A stretch of 60,319 nucleotides of DNA, filler included, from Hausera hauseri (Eukaryota): the NCBI GenBank assembly GCA_046269625.1. It is 11 parts of 11 records of this genome, joined end to end, with 100 filler letters (N's around TTAATTAATTAA, not from the genome) between each part and the next. Parts side by side here need not be neighbours in the genome. Positions count along the whole stretch, not along the records: positions 35,059 to 39,151 come from JBJURY010766652.1; positions 39,252 to 43,460 come from JBJURY010699659.1; 9 more parts are not named here. One strand, given 5' to 3'. Numbering within the stretch: the stretch's first letter is position 1; each line of letters begins with the position of its first letter. Below are positions 1,054 to 43,460 of the stretch, in pieces. Below the pieces are notes generated by a model. The model was not told where the DNA came from, did not search any database, and was given only the letters and a program-made list of their open reading frames with translations. A program made the position numbers and the translations under genes.

Positions 1054-4000
1054 TCACATAAAATACCAAAGTAAAGACAGATTCACATTGATTTTTGCTG
1101 GCCATCCCAAAACCCAAAGAAGTATATTTAAGTTTTCAACAATGATATTAAAACAATAGAAACAAACCGATAAGTTTTTCAAACCACCTTCTGATAAACA
1201 ACGTCGTAAATCTCTCTTTAAATTGTCTGAAGCATTTTGCGATGATGTAATACAAAGACTAGCAATTCTCATTCTCGATTGGAAAATAATATCATCCGGA
1301 AAAAAGTTCAATCCGAATGGTGACTGATCAATACTACACCGTTGTTTATGAAAAGTGCAATACATGCCACCAATCTTTTCCAATTTGTATTTATCCGATT
1401 TACCGAAACTAATTTCCTCTAATTTTTCAATAAAAAGCGGTTTGGATTTTTCATAAGTCAAAAAGTCCAATTTGTGAGATCGCTTTTGAATTTGATGAAA
1501 CGTTTTCGGAAATTTCATGTTACTAGTTTCATCAATGTGCTTTTTAACGCCTTCAATAATCGTACTATCGATAACAGTCGTATACTTGAGACAATTAACC
1601 ACTTCATCAGCCAATGTCCAAACCAATTCGGATTTGCATTTTTGTAACAGTTGCGATTGGAAAACCGACATAATTCGTTTCGTTACGTCGGAATTGCACC
1701 GTTTTGAGCTCTCCTGAAAATCCGGATACAACGAAGGATTGTCAAGTTTTGTTTTCGGTTGCGAATTTTTCAGTTCTTCGTCGATGTATGTCAGTGGAAT
1801 CATGTCAAAATTAAAACGAAATTTTTGAAAATTAACTTCCGAGTCATTCAGTGGCAAAATATCATTCATAAAATCATGTATACACGTTGGGATATCCTTT
1901 AGAGTGAGATATTTTGTTTGATCGCCATATTTAACGGTATAATTAATGGATAGAAATAATGGTCTTTGGTCCTTTCCGATAGTTGTATTATCATAACTTG
2001 ACAGACTTTTAATATCACTATCCGACACGTTATCGGCTAATTCGTGACTATAGTCTAACGACCGTTGTCTAATCAAACCCTTAGCCGTTCCGTTGTCATC
2101 GAGTGAATAGAAACTGTTCATTTCACTCTCATCCTTTTCTTCTTCAATGCTATTCAATTGGTCTTCTTTTCCCGTTTCCGGACAGTAAAGTAAAATTTGC
2201 GGAAACGATGGTATTTCTTTGAAATATTTTGCCATTACCTGTCGAATGCGCTTAACGATTCGATTATGCATTCCGACTTTAATTTCACAACTATCTTTGT
2301 TAATGGCTACCAATGTCTGTTGTGAAACGCACGGATTGTTACGGAGAATATTGAAACAGTGACTGCAAATCGTCGTGACGAATTTCGTTGCATCGATATC
2401 ATTGTACGACAATTCACAGCAATATTCATCAAACGTATTCGCCAGATCACTGTGATCCATCGGTAAACTCTCGCGCAAATTTCGATGAACTCCACTAACG
2501 AACGTCAGTTGATAAATCGAATCCAATTTATGAATGATCTCGTTTAAAAGTTGAGTAATGCTTTCCATTTCAATGGAAAATTCACTCGTTCTTTCCGATT
2601 TATTTTGACTCCGTTCTTTCGACAATGAACTGTTGAGATTATTTTTGACCGGTAAGGTTACTTTCTTTCTATCCGGTAATTTCAGTGTCCATTTATCTTC
2701 AATTAACAATGACAAATGTTTCAACGACATTCCGTAAAGAAACAAATTCATCGGATTAATTTCCGACCGATGGTATTTAATTTCATTGATGTTATTCGGT
2801 ACCATCAGAACAACGAAACAGTCCTGTTTAATCATATAAAAACAACCCCAGGTTTTTGGCAAATCGGTAGCGATTTTCGAATGAACATTGGAGAGGAATT
2901 TATTGTAATTTCCGTTTTCCGTTTTCGTTATATCAATCAAATTGAATCCGTTCCGTTTCAAATGGACATCGAACAATTCCATAAACACCGAATTGATACC
3001 GAGGAAATTGTCGATGGCATCACTCCGATACAGATTGCAACAAATCTGGACTTCCGGCGATCGACTTAACACAGAACAAATGTTCGGTTTGGCCAAACCT
3101 TTTGCCAGTGTCATCGGGTAGATTTTGAAACATTCCAACGTTATAAACGTTTCGACGCACATCGAATCAACGTCGAATATGACGGAGGGAATTTCTTTAA
3201 TTGTCAAATCATCCCAATGGACAACTTCCGGTTCCGAGCCGACAACTTTACCGGCTTTGTTATCAATGAAAATTTCCGTGTAGATAATCCGTGACGATGT
3301 CGTACACGTGTAGTGATTGTCGGACAGAACGGTAACGTCATCCGGTACAGAAATGTTATCGCTGTCCTGTCTCGTTCGATGGTTGTCCGGATAAATCAGA
3401 TATTGAATAAAACACGGATAACAATGGTTTTCATTGTTGATCAATTTGATTTCTTTGATGAGGTTTATGAAATTTTTCGACGAGTCAGAAACCGCCAAAT
3501 GGAATCCTTCTTGCAAACGTATTTTCACCAGCGACTCGAATATGTACTTTATGTACGTTTCGTTGACAAACCACGTCGAACAGTCATAATGGCAATGGTT
3601 GTGCATAAACAACAACGACGGTGACATGGAATTCTGTCGATGTTGTTTCTTCAAACCGTAAACGGATTTAATCGGATTGTACGTCAACACCAAATTCTCC
3701 AAGTCAATACTCAACACCGTACAACAGTTGACCTGATCCCACGATCGCAACTGCGGCGGAACATGTTCCGATTTTTTCATCGACTGACTCGACATGTGCC
3801 GCGGTCGGGCTTGTTTGCCGCGTGGTGGAAATCGCTGATTCCGAATGGCTTTCACCAGTTCCGATACGAATTCGTCGCGAATCTTTTCCGGTGTTCCGAT
3901 GAACATGTTGACGTGTAACGATACTTCAAATTCGTCGACTAGCAATTGGATAACGGCAAAGTGATTCGGTGTGGCCAATTCCGTTTTGTCGGAATTCGTG

Positions 4001-4916
4001 GAGAAAAATTTCACGTACGTACTGTTTTCTTTGACGGTAAACGAACAGTAATTGCGGCAAATCAACGTGTTGAGCTGGACGAGACTTTCACGGCATTGGA
4101 TTTTATTCGTTACAGAATCAGATTGGTTGAGAAATTCCGGCAGTGGATAATCGTGTTCGAGTAGAATCATGAATTTCGTTTTGTACATACACGGTAAATA
4201 ATCCAAATCGACTGTCTGTTTCCAGTAGTCGAGAAACGATTTGAACGTTTTGTCGATCTTGTCAATTGTCTGATTGGTTTGCATCAACATCGGTGTCAGA
4301 CCGTTACTGATAATACTCGGAATGGAGCAATTGTTCTTGACGGTAAACTGCGAATACGTTTCCGTCATGTGGATATAATACCAAGTTTCTTCGATAACCG
4401 TAACGAATCCCTTGATGCTCTGATTCAATTGATTGATGAACTGATCGGAATTCTTTAGAATTTTAATTAACACCGTTTTCAAGTAATTTTGACAGAAAAA
4501 CGACCAAGTAAACGAACAGCGTTTCTGTTGTTCTAATGGTGTTTTAGACGTTATGGAAAATCGGAAAATAATGTCTTGTTTCCAGAATCGAATCAGTTCG
4601 ATTTCGATTCGGGAATCTTTGATCGCACTGACAGACGATATAAAATAGCCCATGTTTATTAACACGATTACGAGAATCGATGGGGAAATATTGATGGTTT
4701 TGTCGGAACTCAGAAAAATCTGTGAAAGACTACTGCAATCGGCATGACAACCCAAGACAATTCCGAAGATGTTTTTCTTCGTCGAAACATCTTTAATATT
4801 CGACATGAAAAATCCACCAGTTGATTTGGAAATGAAAATCAACTGTTCATCATTTCCGTTGTCGGTGATGTTTAAATATCGGTCAATCTCATTACATGAC
4901 TCCGTTTTGACATTGA
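1054..4916 (-). CDS. SZT2: SZT2 (KICSTOR subunit), large internal coding segment, partial
   Basis: 1262-aa uninterrupted ORF, also open upstream to the contig edge. Motifs YWKQ..LD..ILLEHDYPLP, IQCRES..L..SFTVKENSTYVKF, RLQEGFHLA..INLIKEI..CFIQYLIYP and ELVWTLADEVVNCL match recalled SZT2 blocks. The 3' boundary (~1050-1170) is uncertain. Confidence 0.88.
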
Positions 4917-5016
4917 NNNNNNNNNNNNNNNNNNNNNNNNNNNNNNNNNNNNNNNNNNNNTTAATTAATTAANNNNNNNNNNNNNNNNNNNNNNNNNNNN
5001 NNNNNNNNNNNNNNNN
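4917..5016. other. Artificial contig linker (first of 10)
   Basis: Identical N44-TTAATTAATTAA-N44 blocks (stops in all six frames) at 4917-5016, 9143-9242, 14868-14967, 23316-23415, 30350-30449, 34959-35058, 39152-39251, 43461-43560, 47772-47871 and 52309-52408. They define 11 independent contigs. Confidence 0.98.
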
Positions 5017-6178
5017 TCCAGTGTGGTAAGCCACTTTGCTCCTGATAATCTGTCTAGAGCTTCTTTTACTGATGGTAGTGGAAATGAGTCCTTCATCATA
5101 AGCGTGTTTATGGCTCTATAATCTATACAAAATCGATGTTTTGTGGTACCCTTTTTCTTGACCATGAGAATTGGCGAATACCAGTATCGATAGCTCGGTC
5201 GTATTATGTCAACTTTCAGCATACGTTCTATCTCTTTTGTTATTTCGGGTCTTAATGAATGGGGCGGTGGATACCATTTAAGCATCTTTTGCTCTTCTAA
5301 ATAAATTTCGTCATTGGAGCCAGGTTTCTTTTTTAGTGGAATGGTTAGTCTTAAAGTTTTTTCTCTACCTATGTGTTCTTCACTTTGGGCAATAATCGAC
5401 TTATATTTGCATAGTAATTCATAAAATTGACAATATGCTTCTGGTGAAAATTTAGTTTCAACATGAGGCGAAATTCGGCATATTTGTATGGTTTTTCTTC
5501 AGTTGTTATTGCAGATACTTTATAAGTATGACCCAATGTAGTATTGGAGTACAACTTTATGGGAGTTGGTGCATTATTTACTAATCTGATTGGTACCCTT
5601 CCTGTCGTTACTCTTGTCAGAATATTACTAAGTATGATATTTGGATTAACGTCTTTTTGTGGCTCAAAATATATTGGTTGGTCGTCCTCTTCGCGGATTT
5701 GAGCATAAGTTAGCATTTCCGTTCTGGGCGGAATACTTTCGTCGACGGGGATCCATACTTCTTCTTGCTTCCTTTCTTTCATTGTTTTAGTACCTTTCAC
5801 TGGCCCGAGTTCTAATAGTTTTCCGGTCTGTAAATTTATTGCGATATTGGGTAATTGCTTTAGTATATCACAACCTAACACTACATCATCAATTAATTGA
5901 TCCAATATGGCAAACTCGTGTCGAATGATTTGACCCATTAATTGAACTAGGGGACTCCACTTAAATTTCTGTTTGGATTCTTGCCCGAAGGCTTATACGC
6001 TACCTGGGTCTGATAATGATGCTGGCTGCAGTTGTTTTCGAAGTGTCGGCGGTATTGATTCTAATTTGATAATTGATTTCTCTGATCCGGTGTTTATTAA
6101 GGCATAGACTTCCCAGTCTTCAATGGTAACTTTTGTGAAGGGTCTTCCTTCCATATCTGACCCGTAACAACTAGACAT
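5017..6178 (-). pseudogene. pol: Gypsy pol fragment: protease, spacer and RT start
   Basis: Protease with D>N at the DTG triad and the VVLGCDIL motif, followed by RT motifs. Confidence 0.88.
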
Positions 6179-6799
6179 GTCCTTTGGTCGTTTAATTGAA
6201 GAAATCCTATGTCCGTTTATTGTTATCTCTGGTAATGAAATAATATTTTCGGTCAGCTGTTTTAGTTATTCGTTAGGGTACATGTCGTTAATTGCCATAT
6301 TGTTCGCATTTTTTCTAATTAATGGTTCTTGTACTATTGGATTTTGGAACGATTTCATTCCTAAAGTTCCCCAAAATGTTAATTTTGTCTCTATATTTCG
6401 AGCTATTCTCGGTGAGTACAGTATCCCATGGTCATCCTCCGCTCGTCGTTGATTAGTGATTTGCATTTTCTTTAGTACTCCGTATTGTTTTGTTCCTTCA
6501 TAAGGATCTTTATAGCTGGAAGGTTTTTGACAGAATGCCGATCTATATGATACCATGGATGTTTTGTCACAATCCTCGTATATCGGAGCCGTTGGCGACA
6601 TGATAGGTAAGGGTGCTCTAACTACTGAATACATTCTATGTTTATTTTGTCTAAGGATTGCTTCTCCTCCCTTAGGATCGTCATCATCAGAGATATTTCT
6701 TCGTGTCATTGCCTTCTTAGCCCTGTGTTTTAATCAAAATATGGGTCTTGCTCGTTGTTTATAATTACAGTAACCGACATGGCGTTCAACGTCATTTTT

Positions 6800-9142
6800 T
6801 CATCCATTTTCTTCATAGGCCTTAAGCATTTTGCCGAAGGGTGTGATAATTGCAGTTAAGATCTTACAGGAAAATCCTGTTAGCGTGAATATTTCGTACT
6901 CATTTATAACCGCTTGAATTACCGCCTTTACTAGTTGTACCATGAAATAGATTGCTAAAAATCCAAATGCCGCTTGTCCAAAAATTAAAAATCTTCCCCA
7001 TATTTTGTAAAGTATTTCTGTGGTTACTCGCTGGTAATGGTTCGCATCAAGTAAGGATTCCTATTTCGCCTGGTATCGAGTATCATCTACTACGGATGCC
7101 ATAGATCGACTTAATTCGTGTGTTCGCTGTCGTAAAAAAGCGAGAAATTGTCGAAAAGCTTCGATCTCTTTTGGTCTGTAAATGCCCTTTTGAGGTGTAT
7201 CCTGGAATTTATTGTCGGTAATTCCTTTTGCTAAATTAGTTTTAGCTAGTTTTTTAGGAATGGTAGTGACGCCTCCATTAGGTAGGCTAACCCAATCTAT
7301 TTCACTACGCCTAAACATCGGTTCACCCAAACTTGCCTTACAATCCTTTAGAATGGTTGGTTGTGTTGCATTATCGAGAAACACTCTAGTGAGAGGCATA
7401 GCTAAGCGCGGGGTATTCTGATAGATCACAGGAAGTTCTTATATGCATCGTTTTTCCTCGACGTTAATTTGTACGTCTCTTTTCTCGCATTTATATGTCA
7501 GTAGAATTTCACTCTTAACTTGACCAAAAATTTCTTCTCTCATGGGAATAATTGGTGAGGCTAATTCCGGGTTCGCATAAATAAGAGATAATTTTGTCCT
7601 CATAATTTCCGTATCTAATTTGCAGTAATAAGTTATCATTTTGTGGTATAGTTCGGCTATTCCAACCTGTCCCTTGTAATAGAAGTAGTCGTCTCTGTTT
7701 TTCAGATAATCCTCTATCCGGATGTCTTGTGTTTCTAGGTTGTATGTTTTAGCGTTTATCTCGGTTTCTGCGACGAAGTACGCTTCGTAATTAGTGGTGA
7801 ACATTACTACTTCACATTTTGAAATCATTTCATTTTTATAAATTTTAATCCATACTAATTAAAGATTAATATCGTAAGTGTGTGATGCTCTGATACATCT
7901 TCACGTGCTCTTGAACTGATGTCGGATTTGTCTACGTATCGTTTCCCGGTAGTTTCTTTAAATTGTAGTTCTTTGGTCTTAATAAAATTACATGCTTTTC
8001 CCGTGGGCGTTTCCCATATGACGACAGAGCTTCTGAAAACACAAGTTCCGTCTTGCATGTGACATTTTTGATTCTCAGTATATAACTTGGTTACGCTATG
8101 GAACATCACGTTTTGAACTCGCATTTCTAATTCGCAAAAGTCTACTACCACTACGTTTGCTTCCAGTCCTTTTCCGGTATCGTATTCCGTTCCACTACAG
8201 TGCCCGTTATGCATATCTTGCCTTTCGGCTACTATCTTATACGCTCTGATTATTTTTCCAGGCTGCATTTCTAATTCCATGCTATCCCATTTCAGTCTTC
8301 CAGTTTCTTGGGCTTGTTTGCAGTGTTGTCTTTCCAAATTCATTGGAATTGGAGGGGTTGTTGGCTTAATTATCGAGGAGTGCCCGTGAATTAGCCCACA
8401 GTGAAATATACTACGAGATCGTCTTAGCATACATCTCATGCCATCCAGAGATATCAATTTTTTTAGTTGATATAAAAAATATCTCTTCTCTTTTGTCTCT
8501 AATTTGTGGGGTCTGGCATCTTCGCAGGCTTCTAAATCTATTAGTGAGTATTTTTGTCCAAGTTTAAAATTATTGCAATCGTAGACGGTAACAGCGCCCA
8601 TCTGTTTTATCAACACCATTATGGTGGGTAAACTGATTAACCAATTAGATTCGTTCTTTCGGTTGTTGTTATCCGTTGTCGTCAAGTTTCGTATGATGTC
8701 GACGAGTCCATTATTGCTATTCCTCTTGTCTTCTTCCTTGTCAAGCAATTTTGGCCAGTTTACTTCGCATGGACACTTTCTAGCTACTTTCCGTGCCGAA
8801 CTTCTAGCTCGGTTTAATTTATTTTCTCGATTCGGGTTTATCTTAATTGCCAAGTACAATAATACTTTTCTCAACTCTTCTATTGTATTTTCCACCATAA
8901 TCTTCTCGATTACTGCATCGTCAGTTAGGTTCCTTTTCGACAGTTTGAAATGTAAACTTCTCATTATTCTTGCTGCATTCAATATTGCCCTCTCTTTGTC
9001 ATCTAATGTATCTCCTCGGAGACTCGAATAATTTACGATACGTATAAAATTTTTCATTAACTCTCTTAATTCTTCATTATCTGTATTAAAAGTAGGAATC
9101 GACATTTGTCTCAGTTCTCTAATTAATTCTCCATTATAGTCA
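6800..9142 (-). pseudogene. Class III fusion glycoprotein (chuvirus G / herpes gB-like) envelope
   Basis: Hydrophobic signal then VYDC..YSLIDLEAC, C..RRSRSIFHCG..HSS, LYHKMITYYC....RTKLSL..ANP, EILLTYKCEKRDVQI..C..ELPVIYQN..P.TRV, and TM region IWGRFLIFGQAAFGFLAIYFMVQLVKAVIQAVINEY. These follow the chuvirus-type glycoprotein pattern in order. One frameshift (~7850) and several stops. Confidence 0.8.
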
Positions 9143-9242
9143 NNNNNNNNNNNNNNNNNNNNNNNNNNNNNNNNNNNNNNNNNNNNTTAATTAATTAANN
9201 NNNNNNNNNNNNNNNNNNNNNNNNNNNNNNNNNNNNNNNNNN

Positions 9243-11330
9243 AATTTTGTGTAAGATAGTGGTATTAAAAATAGTGTTCGAAGAGGTAAGTTTATCTAAT
9301 GAATGTACCGAACCAACGCAATCATAGTTGTGAGAATCAAATCTCGATTGAATATTGATATTATCATTGAAAATTTTAAGGAATGAAAAGAGTTTGTTGA
9401 CGAAGTTTGAATTACTTACAGGATTTTTGAGTATAGTTGTCCGTGGAAAAATCGTTTGTGCCTTATGGGAGATACTATTTATTCGTGCAGTAGGATGTCC
9501 AGTAGTGTTACGTTTCAGACATTGTTGTTTACAGTCAGTTAAAAGATTGCAGTGCAATAAGAAATCCGAACCTAGGATTGCTGTGCGGACGTTAGCGACG
9601 GTAAATGTCCAATGAAACGTGGCGTGAAAGTTTGGCAAGGTGAACGACAATTTAGATGTACTCGAAATGTCTAGCGATTCTCCTGAAGCCGCAAATAACG
9701 ATTTAGCTTTGAATGGTGAACTTTGTACAGGGAAAGTGAGTGGTAACAAAGAAACCGTAGCGCCTGTATTGATAAGGAAATCTATGGATTGAGTGGTTGG
9801 TGTGGTTATCGAAGCCTTTAGTGTAAAAACTGCAAAAGAAGAGTGTCGGCAGGTAGTTTTAGAGAAGTTGCCTTTGCCAGAATCTGCTGTGAGTACTGGC
9901 TGAAAAATTAGTTTTTTGAAAAAGGAGAAACAGAGCGACTGTTAGAATGGAGGTTTAAGTTTTCGTCATTTGCATAATGAGATTTATTTTTTAAAGTGCA
10001 ACTAGGAATGCATCTGCGTGCGTTATGTCGGAATTTTAATGATATATGCAAATGGCGTTATCTGTATGATATCTTTGATTATAAAATTTGCACCCTAGGT
10101 GGCATTTCTGTGCATTAATATCAAACTTACTGTGGTAATAGCAGATCAGTGATCGTCCAGGTGAAGTTGAACGACCACGACATATTGAACGGATACGGTC
10201 ACGTATGAAACATTCCCTCCGACGAGTCACTGAAATCTCGTTTAGTTTGTTGTTAATATTAATTATTGTTGTTTGTAGGGCCGCATTTTCGGCTCGTAGT
10301 TGATCTAACTGCTGTTTGAATGTGGCATTATTGGTAGTAATGGCTGCAAAAATGACTGATTGGGTTTGCACATTCAAAACCTCGTAAATTTTGTCTGCCC
10401 GTTCGGCCAATTTATCAAGCGTCGTCGATTCTTCGACGACAGTAAGTAAGGCCCTATTTTGTATGAACAATGCGTTCAGAAACTAGCGTTGCAAAAGACC
10501 GGCGTTATGTTGTTTAGTCACGCCAAGTGTTTGAAGTTGAACGAGTGACGTTATGAGGAAATATGATGGTTTTTGCGTCCCCATAGCATTGTCGTTGAAG
10601 AAACGATGAATTATTGAGTCCATAGATGGTTCAGTAAGCTTTAAAACAGCGTAGTAAAGATGGGTATATAGATCAGGTTGCTGGAAGATGTCTAGCAAAT
10701 TAAGAATGGATGTTTTTACAGTTGTCGGTAAAAGACAAAGTAGGTTATGAGCTTTTGTTAGTGGATCAGTGATGTTGTTAGACTGCAGCTAAAGTTTGTA
10801 AAAGCTAAGCCAGGTTTTGTTGGATTTTTCATGATCAATAAAATACTGCATACACTAAGAAAAAGTGTTTGACTGACGGGGTGGAAAATGTATAGCCGGG
10901 GAAAGTAGATTGCATGGTGACGGTCGACGATTTTTGGTTAAAAGCAAAATGTGATGTTTTAGAAGTTTATTTGTCAGTGGTGTTAATGGTGGGCGAGGAG
11001 TCCATTCCACCACGTATGCGAGTGTGTACGTGAATGACGATACAATGTGTTGAAGGAACAGAAAGATTACAATGGTTGACATTAGTTACGGGTAGGTTGT
11101 TGTATGTAAGATAAAAGTCAGAGATGTTGGCGACGTGTAATGCATAATTGTGTAAGTAGGATGCGTCTATGAAATGTGTTATTATGTGTGTGAGTAAACG
11201 GCAATTATTGAGAAAGAATAAAAAGGAAAGTGTCGGTGTAAGCCCAAGTGGTTGGTGTGGTGACGGAACACACCATGGTGCGGGACTCAAAGGCATTGGA
11301 CGGACATGTGGGTGGTCGGTCACGCTGTGA
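9243..11330 (-). mobile_element. UBL-Gag Gypsy (CsRN1 clade) copy 1: UBL-gag-protease, decayed
   Basis: Gag motifs (MGTQKPSYFL, RALLTVVEESTTLDKLAERADKIYEV), tandem CHCC knuckles (CYYHSKF..AQKC..GC), A-AAA-AAC slip site at 9917-9911, protease FLINTGA..ILGSDFLLH. Homologous to 40740-43460 and 55897-59070. Confidence 0.9.
11006..11230 (-). other. Ubiquitin-like domain in frame with Gag (copy 1)
   Basis: LSFLFFLNN...DFYLTYNN...IHVHTRIRGG immediately followed by M. Confidence 0.7.
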
Positions 11331-11579
11331 TTTACTTAGGATTTAAGATTATTGATGCTTACGCATGGACAAAAATTGGAACTATCGGGGTAAATGTGCT
11401 GTAAACAGCAACTGCAACGATTGGCAGTATCGTTTTGCACTGTGGGCTCTGCAGATCGACTTTCTCACTTTGTGTCTTCCTACGAGAGATCTGCGTACTC
11501 AAAGACTCTCTGTATTTTGTTTTCGAAACACTCGATATATTCGTAATTGTCGTAAATGTATTAAGTCAGTGATCTTGTT

Positions 11580-12110
11580 CGAAAACAAATCTTTGAAGTA
11601 GGAATCGATGATTGTGATAGCGTTGTTGAAGATATGTTTTTTGAGCGTGTAGTTTCTTTTCAATGGGGAACAGAACTAGGCCTTGCAGAAGGGCGTATAG
11701 TAGATAACAAACTTGGTTTTGTAGTTATCATGGTACTAATGGGCGACATGGGTACCAATGATGTTGAAATGACAATGGGACTGATTGTAATAGATAATGG
11801 ATTTGTACTGAAATTAACGTCTTTAGATGATTCAGTTAGATGCGTCGTATTTGATGGACGGGAGTGTCTAGTGTTATGCACAGTAGCCCATTTCGAGTAA
11901 TTTGATGCGGTAGCAAACGAAGACAAATTACTCACATGAAGAGGAGTAGTAAAATTACCACTAGATGCCACTTTTGTAGAATAAATCGCTGTAATATTAC
12001 GTATAGTCGTTTTATTTGATTTAAATGTTATAGATTCAGATGCCTTTTTCGAAGATATCAGAATATTAAAGTTGGTCGATTTTGAAGGCTCAGTTGAAAG
12101 TATTGCATTT
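11580..12110 (-). other. Ser/Thr-rich low-complexity coding segment fused in frame to the ZW10 fragment
   Basis: ORF 11660-12346 leaves ZW10 similarity after ..LFIKSL and continues as S/T-rich sequence, which carries on past the stop. Confidence 0.5.
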
Positions 12111-13385
12111 AAGGACTTGATAAATAGAGAGAATAAAGCGTTTAACAAATTCCCGAGAAACCGATTATAAACTCGTTGAGGCAGAACATCGTAAACTTTA
12201 GACAACAACAAAATATTCAAAGTGCTCTGTTTTAATGACTGGTGGAACTTTTCACGTTTTAACGATCCGATATTAGAGAAATCGGAAATATTTTCGAAAC
12301 AAACACTTAACTCATCGATCTGTTGTTGGACTTCTTCAGACAACACTTGGATTGTCGCCTAACGGAACTTATAGACAATTGCCATTAAGTTAAGTGTAGC
12401 GGGTTTAAGGAGACATTCATCGACTGCCTCAAAATTATGATTTCGTTTAAGAATCTTACCGACGTGGACTTTTACATAGGTTGTTCCAAAAAGGCAACGA
12501 TGGGCGATATACATATAGTTATTGTAATGTAAGGCTGCAGCAAGATGTAAATCACGTAAAGCATCTTTGTTCCTCTCTAGTACAACATTTAAATACATAT
12601 CAAATATATCAAATGTGAAAATTCAATCATTTCAAGTATGATCTCTTTATCGTTTTTAACAGAAATTAACTCATAATCACCAAATTTACATTTGATATTA
12701 TCCATCAAATCAATAACTAATTTACTGACCTTGCACGTCGGAAATTGCAATTTGTAAAGATCAATATATTTGGGCAATTCATCACTGTCAGTGAGATTCT
12801 CAACGATTTCCTTTTTAGAGAAATTACCACTGAATGGATCACGATCAACTGTTTTAAATCCAGAATGGATTTGTAACAAAAATCTCGTACCGTCAACAAA
12901 AACGTGTGCTTGATCATCTTACGATTATCGGCATTAAAGTTCTATATGAATTCCTCCAGATTCTGACTGGTCTTTTGTATAAAATGATATTCCTGTAAAA
13001 ATTCGCTGAATTCTCCAATTGTCAATAACAAACTGTGATACAAATAACCGGATGAATTCAATATCAAACTATCGGTGAGTTTCGCGTCGAAATGTTTCAA
13101 AGATTAAACGTCAATTAGCGATTCACCGAATTCTGTTACGGTAAAATTCAACAGGCCACTGTGAAGAGCTTTGAGAGCAATTCTCAATAAATCCAGTAAA
13201 CAGTCCTTTATTTCCCATTTCCAATTGCTGTCATCGGGCAAATTAACAGCGGCAATCATGAATACCATACAGCGTTTTATCATTTGCATGGACAATATAT
13301 AGTCTTTAACATTTTCGATGGTCAAATTTTAGAAAATCGTTCGCGAAAAGCTCCAGCAATTGTTCAACGTGGTGATTCAATTTCA
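12110..13385 (-). pseudogene. ZW10: ZW10 (RZZ/NRZ complex) fragment, intronless, with stops and frameshifts
   Basis: LQFPTCKVSKLVIDLM, AAALHYNNYMYIAH, FR*ATIQVLSEEVQQQIDEL, DVLPQRVYNRFLGNLLN and EFSEFLQEYHFI match the central and C-terminal part of ZW10. In-frame TAG at 12361-12359. Confidence 0.85.
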
Positions 13386-13403
13386 ATTTGAACATAGCTA
13401 TAA

Positions 13404-14867
13404 CTAGCCATTCAAACGTGTCAATGGACGACAGGACTCGTAACGTGGTTCTATGTTTTGTATCAAATATACCGGGCAGTTGTCCAATGGTTGAATCTGA
13501 TAATCTCCTTTATAAGGATAGTTAGAGAGTATCTTAGTTTCCTTGGAGACTATTACTGTTCTATTATTAATTTGCAATCGGGCTTCTCCTTGATTGGTAA
13601 TTATAGCACATGATGGATCCTTTCTTTTAATTCGAATATCAGTCCTTTTAAGGTAGACCTTATCAATGCCTCCCATACAAATCGATCCTTGTTCAGCAAT
13701 GTCTGCGAACTCTATTCTGTCAGTTTTCTTGTCTACAAACAGCTTATCCCATTTCTGAACGATACTTATGTCCATGCGCTGCAATACGGCCTCTGGAATT
13801 AAAGTAGTATTACATGTTATTTCAGATGAGGAGTATCCATCGCATTTATACAAAGGTCTACTTGGAAAAATGAAATATGGAGATCCTTGACGGTTAAGTT
13901 TAATCTGGTACTCTTGTCGTAAATTATTCAATTGTTGCAATAATGTATCTACTCTTTTCCATTGATCATCCGGCAAATTAAAATTCTGATCTACACTGAA
14001 CGTGCCAAAGATATCAGTTTCCTTCAATTGTATTTTTTTAGATAACCATGGCAATTCTATTTCAACTATAAGTTTCTTACAAAGTAGTTGTCTAAGGTTT
14101 TCGTAGCATTTTTCTTTCTCCATATATACATCTTCTAATTCAATTATTAGATCTTCGATCTTCTCTATTCTTATTCGATGAATTTTCGATTCCTGTTCTT
14201 GTTCGTTAGTTTTATCTATTGCTACTAAAGTTGAAAGTAAATTTTTAATTTTTTTGGTTTCTGGCCATAACATATATGGAAGTGTTACTTTGAATGTCTG
14301 GCACTTTTTGTTCTGCCTGATCCAATTGCTTTCTAGTTATGAAGGGTTTTTCCAGGATAGAACTATTGGTTGATGGTTCAGGTGTTAATTGATGGTGTTC
14401 TGCTATAGATTTTGCCATTAACAAACCCGTAAAGGCTGATTTAGTTTGTTCATTAAAAGTTACTGAACGACGAGGCGAGGCATTTCTTTCGTCGTTATTA
14501 CTTTTTCTATTATCTGACAAATTTCCTTTTTCTTTTGTAGGACTGCTACAAGATGGTGTTGCTGAATCCAATTTTCTCTCATTGAAATTTTCGGAATATT
14601 CTGGCGTCGAATTCCTATCGTACCTGTGTGGAGAAATATTCCTATTTGTTGATGTTTCATTTCGTCTAAAATTGTAATCTGATGACCAAGCATATATATC
14701 ATTATTACCATTTGGTCCGGGGGAAGGAGTTCGGTTTCGGTCTCTTGGAGGATATGGACTAGGATTTCTATTATATCTATCCGATTCTCGTCGAGGTGGA
14801 GTGTAGTCACGTCTTCTATCGTAATTTCCTAATCTTGAATCATTATAACTAATTCTATTATCATTTC
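13404..14867 (-). other. Unknown ORFs: Arg/Ser/Pro-rich segment (gag-tail-like) followed by a 289-aa ORF
   Basis: RRRDYTPPRRES..RNPSPYPPRDRNRTPSP..RNASPRRSVTFNE then ORF 14273-13404. No recognisable domain; retroelement origin is inferred only. Confidence 0.35.
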
Positions 14868-38861: not shown

Positions 38862-39459
38862 GTAAGTGTCAGTTTTTTATTTGAGTCATACGTAAAATTC
38901 CCTGATTGGCTATTATTGACAATATTATACACTCATTAAAGTTGCCTTTCTTATTAACATTAAATTATATGTTTATAGAAAATAACCACTGTCCCTCCCA
39001 ACGAACATGTTTTGCCTTTTATTTTATTCTCTTTTGAATTAGTATAATTGTAAAAATTAATGTCATAAACTAAAATAATGTCATAATTTATCCAACATTC
39101 GAATATTTCGATCATATTAAGATATTCGCCGGAGAGTTGACATTTAAACATNNNNNNNNNNNNNNNNNNNNNNNNNNNNNNNNNNNNNNNNNNNNTTAAT
39201 TAATTAANNNNNNNNNNNNNNNNNNNNNNNNNNNNNNNNNNNNNNNNNNNNAAAGAAATTGAATTTGCAGCAATTAAAATTGTCACCAGCGACTGCGGCA
39301 GCAGCTGCGTCGGTAACGCAGAAAAATCACAAAGGGAAAAAGTACTTAACGTTCCATTCCAAAATTCTAACCGATCAGTCATTGTGTCATTCGTCGGTTA
39401 TTTCCGATAATCAATTTAAAAAGCTCTCTTTCAATTCCAAATGTGTCTTAAGGCGGAAC

Positions 39460-40050
39460 GATCTCGCCGATAATTGAATTTGTTCGCTCTATAAACGAAG
39501 CGATGATTTGTCGGAAAACGGTACTGATCGTTTGTTTTGTTTTGACACGAACAGATGGCTCCATGTTAATTGAGCATTGTGGTGTAACAGTGTTTTTGAA
39601 AGGCAGTGCGGTACATTCAATAACGCTCCCGAATCATTTGAGTGCGCCGCAAAAAACATTTGTTCGTCGTGTGGCAAATCCCGTGAGGGTATAGTATGAT
39701 TTTATTCTCGATATACGTCGACATTCCATGTGCTTTGTCCCCTGGAGAAAAATTGCGTTTATTATACTGATAGAACTGTGTATTGTCCGGCACATTTATG
39801 TAAAGGTCACGGTTCGCCATCGAATTCGCTTACCGTTGATTACCGAGTGTATATCTCACGAGATGAATCTCAACAAGTCGCCTTAGTTATAAATGGCGAT
39901 GATCGTAGTTTTAATTTACGAATTGAATCACTTATTCTGTAGTTTATTGGCCAGCTGCTGCCACAACAGATTCATTCGGGTAATTACCATAATCTCAATT
40001 ACGTCTATTCCGTTGGTTATAAGTTCCAAAGAATCTATTGGTCATCTAGA
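39460..40050 (+). pseudogene. KMT2C: KMT2C/KMT2D (MLL3/4, Trr) ePHD plus FYRN fragment, intronless, with in-frame stops
   Basis: One frame reads GTDRLFCFDTNRWLHVN*ALWCNSVFE..CSSCGK..FHVLC..NCVYYTDRTVYCPAH..RVYISRDESQQVA..LRIESLIL*FIGQLLPQQ..VYSVGYKFQRIYWSSR. Confidence 0.9.
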
Positions 40051-40071
40051 TTAATCAAGCTTGGCATTAAC

Positions 40072-40524
40072 ATGGCTTGTGGGTTGTGCAGGGAGGTTAA
40101 AAATAATTTCCAGAAATTACGGAAAGTTAAAATTCCAGATTATCCATTTTTCCCTTGTATTGGTACCGATCCACGTCTGTTTAGGTTTTCCTATTCTGCA
40201 GTAATGGACCACAAAATTACTTCTGACGGGGACAAATATATACTTTACTTGAATCGTATTCAACCTTGTATTTTTATGAATGGTAAAGTCCGTACCGTTA
40301 AATTTCATTCTAAAAATCTTCACTTAAAATTTGGTGAAATAGTAATTCAGACACCATTAACCAGATTTTGCCTTATTAATTTCAACAACAAACCGTTTCA
40401 AATCAGTCTAGTTAGACCGGGACATATGTTCATAAACAATGAAATCATTTCAATTTGGTTTATCTTAAAAGCTAAGTTATTTGTCCAAATAATGCCCCAA
40501 ATTCCTTCACATATATATATATAA
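40072..40524 (+). pseudogene. Unknown host-like segment, possibly an invertebrate PCF11 beta-repeat region
   Basis: DPRLFRF..HKITSDGDKYILYLN..IFMNGKVRTVKF loosely resembles invertebrate Pcf11. It is in frame with the KMT2C/D fragment. Confidence 0.3.
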
Positions 40525-40739
40525 ATGGACAGCTGTTGAAAGAATTGAGTCTCTGAACTATCTGAAATTACACCCATTGACCCCTATGCGCTCATTTCAA
40601 TTGTTTCACAATCGAATATTACCGCTACAAAACGTGCAACACCATTTAAACAAGTGGACGTATTTACCGAATGTAAGCTATACCAAGTCAATAAAAACGG
40701 AATGCAAAGTTAACATTCCGATACTACGCGACTTGAGGG

Positions 40740-43460
40740 GAAATTCGGCCATCCCGCATTTTGCTGCCCGCCCGTCGAGGCGGAGGTCCCGGCCGCCAAC
40801 CCTGCTCCGGTCGGTCGGACGGCAGCTTCGGCGTCGGCCCCACATTACGCCCCCAGACGCACCACTGCTGCAACTTCTATTTTCTTTTTTTAGCAATATA
40901 CATATCTACACCCTCAATACAACACATCTGCACATTCCCATTTTTCAGACATGTATTTCTTCCTTGCTTGGTTCTCCCAACTTTTACCTCACTTAAAACG
41001 GCGCTATCATACATCTCAACGGAACTCTACCTCCTTTCTCAAATCACACTTGCTTCAACATACATCTCCGTATCCGTGGTGGCATGAACACTTCGCCAAC
41101 CATTGACACCACGGATACAATTACCACCACAAAAAAGGCAATACCCATTCTCTACTATACCAGACCAAATCATCCACCTACTTCAACCGACTCAAATTCT
41201 TCAAACAAAAATCCTATAAATACTTCTCTACATTGCACTGATTACTTTATAGATAATGAAAAGTCCAGCAAAACGTGGCTCCACTTTCATCAACTTTGAT
41301 TACAGTCCAACGGTATCACAGACTTTTTATCCAAAGCCCATAGCCTACTTTATCTTCTCCCAAACTCCATAAAGGCCTCAATCCATAATTTACTGGACAT
41401 CTTTCAACACCCCGACCCTTATACCCAATTGTTCGACGCTGTATTAAAACAGACAGAACCATCAATTGACTCCATAATGCAAAGCTTCTTTAACGAAAAC
41501 GCATTGGGGCACAAAACCCAGTGACTTCCTACACACCTCTTTGGTTCACTTACGTACTCTCGGCGTCACTAAGGAGCACAACCCAGATCTCTTGCGCCAC
41601 TATTTTCTTAATGCGCTACCTATCCAAATTCGGGCCCTACTTACCGTGGTAGAGGACTCCACGCCGCTTGACAGATTGGCCGAATTAGCCGATAAGATAT
41701 ACGATGTCCTACAAGTAAATTCTCCACCAGCCGTTTCAGCAGCAGTTGCCGCTAACGATAATACATCTATAGAATAACAACTTAATCAGCTACGTGCTGA
41801 AAACATTGCACTATATGCAACAATCAACAACATCAATAACAAATTGAACGAATTATCTCTGTCTCGCCGAGGGGGTTTTGCCTCTGACCGCGCTCGTTCT
41901 GCATCTAAAAACCATCATCATTGCCTGCGCGTTCGTCGATCAGCTATTACCACAGCAGATTTAACACTAATGCTCAGAATTACTGCCTAGGGTGCAAGTT
42001 TTATAATAAGAATTTTTCCTCGGACACCGTTATTTGCATCTACTACCCAAGATTCAAAAATCAAGCTGGTAAATGTCTTCCAGGCTGCACTTTCAAATCC
42101 AATACGAATGACGGACGTACTGCCTTTTCTTCTAATATTTGTCCTAATTCACTCTTTCAAAAAAACTAAATTCGCCGCCAGCAGTCACGGAAAACTCTGG
42201 CAAAGGCACTCCTTTACATTCAGAATGCCGACACGTCTCTTTTTCTGTCTTTACTCTAAAGGCTGCAATCACTGCTCCTACAACGCAATCTGTTCACTTT
42301 CTCATCGATACAGGTGCAGCGATTTCTCTCCTACCACAAACCTTTTCTACACAAAATACTCCATTCAATATCAAATTCTTATACACTGCTTCGGGCCAAC
42401 CGCTGCACATTTCTGGCATGGCTAAATTATCTTTCACTTTACAAAATTTCTCTACATCTTTCCTCTGGACCTTCGCAGTCGCTAACGTCCAGTCGGCAAT
42501 TCTAGGATCTGACTTTCTTTCACATTATAATTTACTGGTTGACTGCAGTCAGCGATGTTTGAGGAACAGCACCACTGGCGACATTTCTGAACATGTAAAT
42601 AGCATTTCGACTACCGCGCAGTCAACCGGAATGCGGAAGTCAATCTTAAAAAAGTCTACAAATGATTCGATTTTTTAAAACAATAATTCCATTCGTAAAT
42701 TTTTAAATAATAATACTGACATTCAATCGAAGTTCAATGTTGATAATTGTGGTACTGCCACCAACGCTAACTCATTCGACAAAAATACCTCAGCCAACAC
42801 CATTTTCAATTCAACCATCTTACACCAAATACCACTTGACTGCACATCACTAAACAACTCACACATTGCATCTGCTACTACTCAAGCCATTTCACAACCT
42901 TCACCAAATCTGTCACAGTTACCTACAACTTTACAACAGTTCGTCAACACATCTTGTCCACGCGTACTTAAAAAAGACCGTTCCTTTACTCCCGCAAACA
43001 GCACTTTACACCATATAGTCACAGCACCAACGTCCAATACGCCAAAAGGTACGGCCTCTGCCATCTCGTCATAGACAGGCCGTAGAAGCCGAATTACTAG
43101 AGCTAGAACATTCCGGTATAGTACGTCGTTCCCAATATCCTTGGTCATCACCGTTATACGTTGTACAAAAAAAGGACGGTACTTTTAAACCATGCGGTGA
43201 CTACCGACAGCTGAATAACTTGACTATCATGGACGCATATCCTTTACCACTCATCGAGGATATCCTGCATCGTCTTAATTCAACCACCATCTATTCAACC
43301 ATTGATCTAGCTAAAGCATACCACCAAATACCGGTGGCACCCGAAGACATTGAAAAAACCGCAGTAACAACTCCTTTTGGCCTCTATGACTATCTGTTTA
43401 TGCCATTCGGTTTGCCGAATGCCGCACAAACTTTTTAGCGGCACATAGATTCAATTCTTT
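40740..43460 (+). mobile_element. UBL-Gag Gypsy (CsRN1 clade) copy 2: UBL-gag, -1 frameshift, protease, RT
   Basis: GC-rich leader, UBL, gag (LLRHYFLNALPIQIRALL..LDRLAELADKIY), CHCC x2, A-AAA-AAC at 42160-42166, intact FLIDTGA in the -1 frame, RT (YPLPLIEDIL..IDLAKAYHQIPV..KTAVTTPFGLY..MPFGL). Confidence 0.92.
40868..41083 (+). other. Ubiquitin-like domain in frame with Gag (copy 2)
   Basis: LQLLFSF...NFYLT*NGAII...TCFNIHLRIRGG followed by ATG at 41084; 72 codons. Confidence 0.75.

What the first reader, a model, noticed from the sequence alone, without database searches (positions are those of the whole stretch)
39252..41083. Each UBL-Gag copy is preceded by a different same-strand, intronless host-gene fragment: a cargo-capturing retroelement
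Seen: copy 1 follows a ZW10 fragment, copy 2 follows KMT2C/D (plus a PCF11-like piece), and copy 3 follows FBXO38-like and unknown ORFs. All are sense to the element, apparently intronless, decayed and truncated. No shared LTR or PBS is visible between cargo and UBL-Gag. Three of three cases on independent contigs is unlikely to be chance. Inference: the cargo lies inside the element between the 5' LTR and gag, captured from mRNA by template switching, and the UBL acts as a cleavable adaptor that lets arbitrary cargo be fused ahead of Gag without disabling it.
Basis: partly seen in the sequence, partly recalled or inferred. Interest (0 to 1): 0.88.

Follow-up and report, generated by a model that had tools for sequence, protein, structure and literature searches.

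The report
Ubiquitin-tagged retrotransposon carrying host gene fragment
A decayed gypsy-type retrotransposon, whose capsid (Gag) gene is preceded by a ubiquitin-like domain ending in Gly-Gly, carries a repeated, same-strand fragment of the host chromatin gene KMT2C/D just upstream, and related elements carry other host gene pieces in the same position, which suggests a natural "ubiquitin-fusion" way of carrying passenger proteins.

Summary

- **Host fragment:** 39252-40521 (+) is one continuous, decayed coding frame, collinear with the KMT2D extended PHD finger (ePHD) and FYRN domains.
- **Element:** it is followed on the same strand by a 360-nt stretch open in the UBL frame, a ubiquitin-like domain (40886-41083, ending RIRGG), Gag, a -1 frameshift site, protease and the start of RT. 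The contig ends there.
- **No LTR signs:** I found no LTR, PBS, tRNA or internal repeat between the host fragment and the UBL.
- **Not confirmed:** the "PCF11-like piece".

Independent support comes from public metagenome ORFs.
- 16 of 16 related UBL-Gag proteins keep the terminal GG, and a modelled relative folds like ubiquitin.
- Four lineages carry different host fragments upstream of the UBL in one uninterrupted ORF: DIS3L1 plus CNOT1, CARM1, histone H2A, and PP1.
- In a public run the KMT2-like part is itself repeated. Two of its stop codons are private to this copy.

Best reading (about 0.55): the host fragment sits in the element's 5' region and is translated as an N-terminal passenger. 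Host deubiquitinases then cut it off after GG.

Not shown: that the cargo lies inside the LTRs, that the parent gene had introns there, and that cleavage occurs. The tools that fetch neighbouring contigs were closed or found nothing.

The parts
39252..40521 (+). Host-derived cargo. It is one continuous decayed coding frame (window frame 2) from a KMT2C/D-type gene, cut by the contig's left edge. In-frame stops lie at 39475-77, 39571-73, 39697-99 and 39940-42.
   Evidence: 4 stops in 423 codons against 21-40 in the other frames. Collinear matches to KMT2D. No GC skew, unlike the element. Repeated in run X1, and the stops at 39697-99 and 39940-42 are private to this copy (tables 2 and 3).
39478..39830 (+). 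Extended PHD finger (ePHD) part of the KMT2C/D fragment.
   Evidence: The C-terminal half matches KMT2D chain residues 828-903, E 1.7e-9. The N-terminal half is recognised only by eye from its motif pattern, because the short pieces alone were not significant.
39949..40047 (+). FYRN domain of the KMT2C/D fragment. No FYRC or SET follows it.
   Evidence: Pfam FYRN E 3.6e-6, 26.9 bits against a cut-off of 24. KMT2D residues 907-958.
40493..40524 (.). (TA)n tract where the cargo frame ends and the UBL frame opens. This is the probable cargo/element junction and also the compositional boundary.
   Evidence: ORF coordinates. The palindromic TA run is repeat I10. Other copies differ in length here by 1, 3, 4 and 6 letters (table 4). 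GC skew changes from about 0 to negative here.
40525..40885 (+). Pre-UBL stretch, open in the UBL's frame. It includes a G+C-rich, Arg-rich island (about 40740-40870) whose length varies between copies.
   Evidence: 0 stops in 120 codons in frame 3, against 3-9 in the other frames. Joints skip 63-218 nt within 40644-40894 in other copies, and 25 contig variants are listed at 40602-40645. The island is no more structured than shuffles, z +0.52.
40886..41083 (+). Ubiquitin-like domain (frame 3) ending RIRGG. It is broken by an in-frame stop at 40994-96.
   Evidence: tblastn with P0001, P0002 and P0049 aligns their UBLs here. BLASTP to the P0002 UBL. A relative's UBL models as a beta-grasp that matches ubiquitin, TM 0.80. 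The window's own piece gives no Pfam or PDB sequence match.
41070..41118 (+). 12-bp hairpin spanning the UBL/Gag junction and the Gag ATG.
   Evidence: Inverted repeat I3. MFE -21.8 kcal/mol, z -4.36, 0 of 200 shuffles as stable. Its function is unknown.
41084..42166 (+). Gag: a DUF7041-like N-terminal part, a helical core and two CHCC-type knuckles, both with ligand substitutions. The breaks are a stop at 41297-99, a frame change near 41510, a stop at 41775-77, and a frame change near 41912-41924.
   Evidence: phmmer hits at 60%, 54% and 53% identity to P0001-P0003. tblastn segments. Alignments.
42160..42169 (+). Slippery heptamer A AAA AAC followed directly by the gag stop. Pol continues in the -1 frame.
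   Evidence: Read from the sequence. Relatives' Gag ORFs end in ...KN, followed by a stop or by one further residue, which fits the same site.
42148..42675 (+). Aspartic protease (DTG at 42307-42315), frame 2. A stop lies at 42676-78.
   Evidence: Pfam gag-asp_proteas E 5e-4 and RVP E 0.018, both below their cut-offs. The motif was read.
43019..43460 (+). N-terminal part of a Ty3/gypsy-type reverse transcriptase, frame 3. It has a stop at 43436-38 and is cut by the contig's right edge.
   Evidence: Pfam RVT_1 E 4.5e-13, 49.8 bits against a cut-off of 29.6.

Best explanation
The piece is the 5' two-thirds of a decayed copy of a Ty3/gypsy LTR retrotransposon. Its Gag has the CHCC knuckle signature of the CsRn1 clade. 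In this family Gag is not made on its own. It is translated behind a ubiquitin-fold domain that ends in Gly-Gly, and something variable always lies upstream of that domain in the same reading frame.

In this lineage the upstream part is an intron-free, sense-oriented piece of a KMT2C/D mRNA (ePHD + FYRN) of at least 1.27 kb. It became part of the element's 5' region and was then copied along with it.

Inferred mechanism:
1. Translation starts in the passenger and runs through the UBL into Gag, and by -1 frameshifting into Pol.
2. Host deubiquitinating enzymes cut after GG, as they do in natural ubiquitin-fusion precursors. This frees Gag with a normal N-terminus, whatever sits upstream.
3. That tolerance explains why many unrelated host fragments are found at this one position.

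What is shown: the domain order, the ubiquitin fold and GG conservation in relatives, host fragments fused in frame in relatives, and that the KMT2 part is repeated.

What is inferred: that the cargo lies inside the LTRs, that capture happened by RT template switching on co-packaged mRNA, and that cleavage happens at GG.
For: - **Domain order and frames:**
- **KMT2D collinearity:**
- **Family:** 31 Gag relatives, the closest at 53-60% identity.
- **UBL:** the AlphaFold model of relative P0006 has a beta-grasp at residues 16-91. The top Foldseek hits are ubiquitin itself, target TM about 0.80, rmsd 2.4-2.7 A. GG is kept in 16/16 UBL-bearing relatives, and many have the exact RLRGG tail of ubiquitin and ISG15.
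- **Cargo in relatives, each in one contiguous ORF called on metagenome contigs:**
  - DIS3L1 residues 45-340, with native numbering kept, plus the C-terminal half of the CNOT1 MIF4G domain, in P0002/P0032.
  - CARM1, E 3.7e-80, in P0049.
  - Histone H2A starting at its own Met, in P0008/P0033.
  - PP1 residues about 200-285, E 7.6e-24, in P0048.
  - Two of these fusions recur on separate contigs at 98-99% identity.
- **In the window:** the cargo frame has 4 stops against 21-40 in the other frames. The 120 codons before the UBL are open in the UBL frame.
- **Repetition in run X1:**
  - Summed depth is 115-1541 over 39534-40520, against 21-36 to the left and 3,600-14,000 over Gag.
  - 3-16 distinct contig variants cover the cargo.
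  - At two of its stops nearly all the depth carries another letter.
  - A contig joins 40666 to 40885, so the pre-UBL stretch is linked to the UBL in other copies too.
Against: - No LTR, PBS, TSD or polypurine tract is visible. The contig is cut on both sides, so 'inside the element' is not demonstrated.
- Logan contig depth is a sum over all contigs laid at 80% likeness. It is not a copy number.
- No listed contig bridges the KMT2 part to the UBL.
- In this copy the cargo and the UBL are in different frames, and both are broken.
- The window's own UBL gives no significant sequence match to ubiquitin. The fold evidence comes from a relative.
- One relative (P0050) is a probable assembly chimera.
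- In three relatives the cargo starts at or near the host protein's own N-terminus. This also fits a run-off to the 5' end of a host mRNA, which is the first rival explanation.
- Cleavage after GG is untested.
Confidence: 0.55

Rival explanations
1. Dead-end chimeric retrocopies. While copying the element's RNA leftwards, RT switched to a host mRNA and ran on without returning to the element's 5' end. The result is host cDNA joined to a 5'-truncated element with no 5' LTR. The repetition seen today would then come from later segmental or tandem duplication, not from transposition.
For: - In relatives the first cargo begins at or near the host protein's own start: H2A from its Met, DIS3L1 with native numbering, CARM1 from near its N-terminus.
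- P0050 shows a junction in mid-Gag, not upstream of the UBL.
- No LTR or PBS is seen upstream of the UBL.
Against: - Junctions cluster just upstream of the UBL in five lineages, not at random points.
- Internal host fragments also occur: PP1 residues 200-285, the CNOT1 MIF4G half, and KMT2 ePHD-FYRN.
- The KMT2 part shows many diverged variants, 5-20% different, as expected from copying over time.
- Long ORFs are kept open across cargo, spacer, UBL and Gag.
Confidence: 0.2
2. The UBL is not a cleavage module. It is a permanent domain of Gag that recruits ubiquitin-binding host machinery, such as ESCRT or proteasome shuttle factors, as in UBL-retropepsin proteins of the Ddi1 type. The upstream extensions then stay attached, or are simply untranslated leader sequence that happens to be open.
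For: - The fold is a generic beta-grasp.
- Sequence similarity to ubiquitin is weak, Pfam E about 1e-3 in one lineage only.
- Some relatives have only 0-40 residues upstream of the UBL.
Against: - The di-glycine is the one feature kept in all 16 relatives while the rest of the domain drifts to under 25% identity. Many relatives keep R-L-R-G-G.
- Permanent UBL domains generally do not need GG (established knowledge).
- Upstream open stretches of 105-700 codons are far longer than chance allows.
Confidence: 0.2
3. Chance adjacency. A 5'-truncated UBL-Gag element lies next to an unrelated repeat or pseudogene that happens to contain a KMT2C/D fragment in the same orientation.
For: - Depth rises about 5-fold near 40944, so the left part is rarer than Gag.
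- The composition differs left and right of about 40500.
- No shown contig bridges the two parts.
Against: - The same arrangement, with different host genes, recurs in four public lineages as single ORFs.
- Repetition is continuous from 39534 to the UBL, without a single-copy gap.
- The pre-UBL stretch is open in the UBL frame and abuts the cargo frame within a 30-nt TA tract.
Confidence: 0.1
4. Assembly artefact. The contig, and the fused ORFs of relatives, are mis-joins made by short-read assemblers.
For: P0050 joins a bacterial-type DUF5777 beta-barrel with a signal peptide to mid-Gag. All relatives come from metagenome assemblies.
Against: - DIS3L1-CNOT1-UBL-Gag and H2A-UBL-Gag each occur on two different contigs with small differences.
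- Junctions always lie upstream of the UBL, are sense-oriented and in frame.
- An independent run holds diverged copies of every part of the window's stretch.
Confidence: 0.05

Closest known systems
CsRn1 clade of Ty3/gypsy LTR retrotransposons (CsRn1, PwRn1, AgCR; PMC2582038)
   Same: The Gag has the unusual CHCC signature CX2HX9CX3C. The pol order is PR then RT. In some members gag and pol overlap by a -1 frameshift.
   Different: No ubiquitin-like domain or host-derived N-terminal extension is described for that clade in the paper I read. The knuckle is duplicated here. The clade's tRNA-Trp PBS was not found in this piece.
Bs1 of maize and other LTR-retrotransposon gene transductions (reviewed in PMC13317346)
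   Same: An LTR retroelement carries several fragments of spliced host genes, which form a hybrid ORF with element sequence. Abnormal template switching between co-packaged RNAs is the accepted route.
   Different: Bs1 is a single, non-autonomous plant lineage. Here an animal-type family shows many independent captures at one defined position, upstream of a UBL, and the gag-pol coding capacity is kept.
Acutely transforming retroviruses with gag-onc fusions (established knowledge, not tested here)
   Same: Capture of intron-free host mRNA sequence in sense orientation, expressed as a fusion with Gag.
   Different: There the cargo replaces viral genes and makes the virus defective. Here the cargo lies upstream of an apparently complete UBL-Gag-Pol, and a candidate release site separates the two.
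Natural ubiquitin-fusion precursors (UBA52, RPS27A, polyubiquitin) and ubiquitin-coding insertions in cytopathic pestiviruses (established knowledge)
   Same: A ubiquitin fold ending in GG sits directly in front of another protein. Host deubiquitinases cut after GG and free the downstream protein. In pestiviruses this creates a new polyprotein cleavage site.
   Different: The domain here is highly diverged from ubiquitin, at 17-19% identity in structural alignment. It sits in a retrotransposon and has a variable passenger in front of it. Cleavage is not shown.
Capture of nxf2, aub and piwi fragments by Drosophila telomeric LINEs (PMC13534243)
   Same: Repeated, independent capture of host regulatory gene fragments by one group of retrotransposons, with higher copy numbers in the capturing lineages.
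   Different: Those are non-LTR elements with short (140-235 bp) non-coding inserts thought to act through piRNAs. Here the inserts are 0.3-1.3 kb, in frame and apparently translated.

Membership tests
CsRn1 clade, Ty3/gypsy LTR retrotransposons | Gag CHCC signature CX2HX9CX3C | tested here: met
   Present twice in relatives P0001, P0003, P0049 and others. The definition is from PMC2582038. In the window both knuckles are recognisable at about 41950-42090, but each has lost ligand residues.
CsRn1 clade, Ty3/gypsy LTR retrotransposons | tRNA-Trp primer binding site next to the 5' LTR | tested here: inconclusive
   No match with up to 3 mismatches (17-mer) or up to 2 (10- and 12-mers) on the + strand.
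CsRn1 clade, Ty3/gypsy LTR retrotransposons | LTR pair with 4-bp target site duplication | not testable with these tools
   The piece ends inside RT. It holds no long direct repeats.
CsRn1 clade, Ty3/gypsy LTR retrotransposons | Pol with DT/SG protease followed by RT, and gag-pol fused or overlapping by -1 | tested here: met
   DTG at 42307-15 and RVT_1 at E 4.5e-13. A AAA AAC at 42160-66 precedes the gag stop, and pol is in the -1 frame.
CsRn1 clade, Ty3/gypsy LTR retrotransposons | RT groups with the clade in a tree | not tested
Processed (type 1) ubiquitin-like proteins / ubiquitin-fusion precursors | Beta-grasp fold | tested here: met
   Relative P0006 residues 16-91 have the order strand, strand, helix, strand, strand, short helix, strand, with pLDDT 66-87. 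The best PDB matches are ubiquitin, TM 0.80. The window's own copy was not modelled because it is broken by a stop.
Processed (type 1) ubiquitin-like proteins / ubiquitin-fusion precursors | C-terminal Gly-Gly directly followed by the next protein | tested here: met
   The window has RIRGG, then the Gag Met at 41084. 16 of 16 relatives keep GG.
Processed (type 1) ubiquitin-like proteins / ubiquitin-fusion precursors | Sequence membership in Pfam ubiquitin (PF00240) | tested here: not met
   Only P0019 and P0037 reach E about 1e-3, at 19 bits against a cut-off of 25.4. The window piece gives nothing. This is therefore a ubiquitin-fold domain, not a member of the ubiquitin family by sequence.
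Processed (type 1) ubiquitin-like proteins / ubiquitin-fusion precursors | Cleavage after GG by a deubiquitinase or UBL protease | not testable with these tools
   This needs an experiment.
Gene transduction by an LTR retroelement (Bs1 type) | Host fragment lies between the element's LTRs | not testable with these tools
   No LTR was seen, the contig is cut, and neighbouring contigs of relatives could not be fetched.
Gene transduction by an LTR retroelement (Bs1 type) | Fragment derives from spliced mRNA (no introns) | tested here: inconclusive
   One frame runs over 1.27 kb and is collinear with KMT2D across ePHD and FYRN. The relatives' cargos cover 85-300 host residues without interruption. 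The parent genes of the unknown hosts were not available.
Gene transduction by an LTR retroelement (Bs1 type) | Fragment is amplified together with the element | tested here: inconclusive
   The cargo is repeated, with 3-16 contig variants and summed depth 115-1541, and it is contiguous with repeated element sequence. No bridging contig was listed, and depth is not copy number.
KMT2C/D gene (as opposed to a fragment) | FYRC and SET domains downstream of FYRN | tested here: not met
   No Pfam match at E up to 1 after FYRN. The frame ends at 40521, so this is a fragment and not a gene.

The most novel reading that the evidence does not exclude
The UBL-GG module works as a built-in ubiquitin-fusion expression cassette. 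It lets this retrotransposon family pick up pieces of host regulators and release them as free accessory proteins.

The pieces seen are KMT2C/D reader domains, CARM1, the DIS3L1 PIN-CSD part, the CNOT1 MIF4G domain, PP1 and histone H2A. Lineages would then be selected for passengers that act as dominant-negative decoys against chromatin or RNA-decay control of the element. This would be an invertebrate counterpart of oncogene or accessory-gene capture by retroviruses that leaves the element autonomous.
Probability: 0.15. Interest if true: 0.9.

Novelty: new variant of a known kind. Interest (0 to 1): 0.76.

Why it matters
Gene capture by LTR retroelements is known mostly from plants and from defective oncogenic retroviruses, and it usually cripples the element.

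A family in which a ubiquitin-fold, GG-ended domain separates Gag from whatever lies upstream would explain how an autonomous element can tolerate, carry and express arbitrary host protein fragments again and again.

Three consequences follow:
- It would be a natural precedent for the laboratory ubiquitin-fusion technique inside a mobile element.
- It would be a new route of exon shuffling and retrogene spread in animals.
- It would give a testable case of transposons borrowing host chromatin and RNA-decay factors.

I found no description of a UBL-Gag retrotransposon in the searchable literature. That library is incomplete.

Tried and rejected
- **A UBL at 40510-40745.** My first guess was a stretch ending ILRDLRGN, or a tandem second UBL. 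Rejected: no Pfam or PDB match and no BLASTP similarity to relatives there. The real UBL is 40886-41083.
- **PBS or tRNA between cargo and UBL.** None found.
- **Rfam families.** None at E up to 1.
- **LTR-like direct repeats inside the piece.** None; only 15-24-nt chance pairs. Tandem repeats: one trivial 9-mer.
- **G+C-rich island 40740-40870 as a structured RNA.** z = +0.52, rejected.
- **'PCF11-like piece'.** Nothing in Pfam or the Atlas. 40060-40521 remains unassigned. It is probably the poorly conserved KMT2 linker after FYRN, because it stays in the same open frame.
- **Short ePHD pieces alone.** Not significant against the PDB.
- **Size-limited protein search with the 193-aa cargo ORF.** No hits. 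The two further word-index searches found few relatives.
- **Fetching DNA around relatives.**
  - Scans of viral contigs and metagenome contigs found nothing.
  - Of two scans of genome contigs, the second gave one locus, L001. It is an ordinary DUF7041 Gag without a UBL, on a mis-binned eukaryotic contig.
- **The search of earlier findings.** It was closed.
- **Host taxon from the CARM1 cargo.** The Atlas says only 'eukaryotic type I PRMT'.
- **Selection on cargo versus Gag between near-identical copies.** Too few differences to say anything.
- **Complex prediction.** No job was sent, because no eukaryotic deubiquitinase reference is offered.

Full report
**What is in the piece.** All features lie on the + strand of 39252-43460. 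Translation in three frames, stop-to-stop ORFs, Pfam and tblastn with relatives give this order:

| Coordinates | Feature |
|---|---|
| 39252-40521 | One decayed coding frame (frame 2) |
| 40493-40524 | (TA)n tract where that frame ends and frame 3 opens |
| 40525-40885 | Stretch open in frame 3, containing a G+C- and Arg-rich island |
| 40886-41083 | Ubiquitin-like domain ending RIRGG, with one in-frame stop at 40994-96 |
| 41084-42166 | Gag, with two stops and two frame changes |
| 42160-42169 | Heptamer A AAA AAC directly before the gag stop |
| 42148-42675 | Protease in the -1 frame (DTG at 42307-15) |
| 43019 to the contig end | First part of a reverse transcriptase (RVT_1, E 4.5e-13) |

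The finding's end coordinate, 41083, is the last glycine of the UBL.

**The cargo.**
- The 80-aa piece 39700-39939 matches KMT2D (PDB 9yle chain K) at residues 828-903, E 1.7e-9.
- The next piece continues at residues 907-958 and reaches Pfam FYRN above its cut-off. The match is therefore collinear across an in-frame stop.
- The N-terminal half of the ePHD (39478-39696) I recognise only by its motif pattern, because the short pieces are not significant alone.
- Frame 2 has 4 stops in 423 codons from the contig edge to 40521. The other five frames have 21-40. The whole 1.27 kb is therefore one recently decayed, uninterrupted coding sequence.
- No FYRC or SET follows, so it is a fragment.
- Its base composition has no GC skew, whereas the element is strongly C over G (skew -0.17 to -0.36). 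The change lies near the TA tract, which I take as the junction.

**Nothing LTR-like lies between cargo and UBL.**
- No tRNA.
- No Rfam match.
- No long direct repeat.
- Instead, the 120 codons before the UBL are free of stops in the UBL's own frame, against 3-9 stops in the other frames.
- The cargo frame and this frame overlap within the 30-nt TA tract. There, other copies differ in length by 1, 3, 4 and 6 letters (table 4), so the phase relation of cargo and UBL is not the same in all copies.

**Is the cargo repeated?** One public run (X1, Logan contigs, 39% of the words) was laid at 80% likeness, and 7,577 contigs were laid. Summed depth:

| Region | Summed depth |
|---|---|
| 39252-39533 | 21-36 |
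| 39534-40520, the KMT2-like part | 115-1541 |
| 40521-40943 | 400-1180 |
| UBL C-terminal half and Gag | 3,600-14,000 |
| RT | up to 156,000 |

- Distinct variant contigs number 3-6 over ePHD/FYRN, 16 at 40241, 25 at 40602-40645, and 50-88 in gag-pol.
- Four separate contigs cover 40096-40424 at about 15% divergence.
- At 39699 and 39941, inside two of the cargo's stop codons, at least 99% of the laid depth carries another letter. Those stops are private to this copy.
- A contig joins 40666 to 40885, which links the pre-UBL stretch to the UBL in other copies.

Caveats: these depths are sums over contigs and are not copy numbers, and no listed contig bridges the KMT2 part to the UBL. Even so, an ordinary single-copy pseudogene is excluded.

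**The family.** phmmer with the Gag piece 41478-41774 against 1.84 billion representatives gave 31 hits. The closest are P0001 (60%), P0002 (54%) and P0003 (53%). All come from metagenome or Logan assemblies, so they are contiguous ORF calls without splicing. Alignments show two groups.
- Ordinary DUF7041-type Gags have one knuckle.
- A UBL-bearing group has the layout variable N-terminus, UBL, 15-42-residue linker, Gag, and two knuckles of the form CX2HX9CX3C. That form is the CHCC signature of the CsRn1 clade (PMC2582038). The same paper reports -1 frameshifting in some members of that clade.
- The relatives' Gag ORFs end in ...KN, directly or one residue before their stop. This fits the same slippery site.

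**The UBL.**
- All 16 UBL-bearing relatives keep GG at the domain's end, often as RLRGG, while the rest of the domain has drifted.
- An AlphaFold2 model of relative P0006 (19-row alignment, mean pLDDT 72) has a beta-grasp at residues 16-91.
- Foldseek against the PDB returns ubiquitin itself as the top hits (E 2e-4, target TM about 0.80, rmsd 2.4-2.7 A, 17-19% identity).
- By sequence only one lineage touches Pfam ubiquitin, at E about 1e-3. The domain has the ubiquitin fold but is not a sequence member of the ubiquitin family.

**Cargo in relatives.**

| Protein(s) | Host fragment(s) |
|---|---|
| P0002/P0032 (996/1051 aa) | DIS3L1 residues 45-340 with native numbering (E 4e-25), then the C-terminal half of the CNOT1 MIF4G domain (E 1e-16) |
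| P0049 (900 aa) | CARM1, chain residues 82-341, E 3.7e-80 |
| P0008/P0033 (701/706 aa) | Nearly whole histone H2A from its own Met, without its stop |
| P0048 (553 aa) | PP1 residues about 200-285, E 7.6e-24 |

- Each fragment lies upstream of the UBL, in sense, in one open frame with UBL and Gag.
- Two of the fusions occur on two contigs each, at 98-99% identity with small in-frame length differences.
- Three further long N-termini (P0022, P0047, P0057) have no recognisable domain.
- P0050 fuses a bacterial-type beta-barrel to mid-Gag. It is best read as an assembly chimera, which is a warning about this kind of data.

**Interpretation.**
- Recurrence of unrelated host fragments at one position, in frame, together with the conserved GG, is what one expects if the polyprotein is translated from the passenger's start and then cut after GG by host deubiquitinases. 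Natural ubiquitin-fusion precursors work this way (established knowledge).
- That the KMT2 part is repeated argues that it belongs to the copied unit, which for an LTR element means between the 5' LTR/PBS and gag.
- Capture by template switching on co-packaged mRNA is the accepted route for such transductions (PMC13317346), but it is not tested here.
- The main rival is a dead-end chimeric cDNA, formed when RT runs off on a host mRNA. The native N-termini of three cargos favour it. The internal fragments (PP1, CNOT1, KMT2), the clustering of junctions before the UBL, and the many diverged copies argue against it.

**What I could not do.**
L001 turned out to be an ordinary Gag without a UBL.
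- Earlier findings of the scan were not open.
I name breaks only by position.

**Literature.** Searches for a ubiquitin-like domain in retrotransposon Gag found nothing relevant. The closest described systems are Bs1, gag-onc retroviruses, ubiquitin insertions in pestiviruses and the telomeric LINE captures.

**Verdict.** I class it as a new variant of LTR-retroelement gene capture with an undescribed ubiquitin-fold adaptor. Interest 0.76.

Noticed in passing
window 42160-42169: A canonical -1 slippery heptamer, A AAA AAC, lies directly before the gag stop, and pol is open in the -1 frame from 42148. Relatives' Gag ORFs end in ...KN, directly or one residue before their stop, so the site seems conserved across the family.
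   Followed up: partly
window 41070-41118: A perfect 12-bp hairpin spans the UBL/Gag junction and the Gag ATG (MFE -21.8 kcal/mol, z -4.36, 0 of 200 shuffles as stable). Its function is unknown. No other copies were available to test covariation.
   Followed up: partly
window 40740-40870: A G+C-rich island reads as an arginine-rich stretch in the UBL frame. Other copies in run X1 skip 63-218 nt here, so its length is variable. It is not unusually structured as RNA (z +0.52).
   Followed up: partly
protein P0050 (397 aa, ENA metagenome contig of 3632 nt): A bacterial-type DUF5777 outer-membrane beta-barrel with a signal peptide (Pfam E 2.3e-30) is fused in frame to the middle of a Gag of this family. 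It is probably an assembly chimera. Capture of a horizontally acquired gene cannot be excluded.
   Followed up: no
protein P0022, residues 1-45: The N-terminus holds two tandem copies of a short motif that resembles the N-terminal helix region of histone H2A. It may be the remnant of another H2A capture. This was seen by eye only.
   Followed up: no
L001 1-7500 (contig JACERO010000106.1, filed as a Nitrosopumilus MAG): The contig carries eukaryotic retroelement genes: a large pol-like ORF with protease, RT and integrase-like parts, and a second integrase-like ORF. It is therefore a mis-binned eukaryotic contig in an archaeal MAG.
   Followed up: no
window 40060-40521: A 150-codon open, A+T-rich continuation of the KMT2 frame follows FYRN. 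It has no detectable homologue but is repeated in run X1 (four contigs at about 15% divergence).
   Followed up: partly
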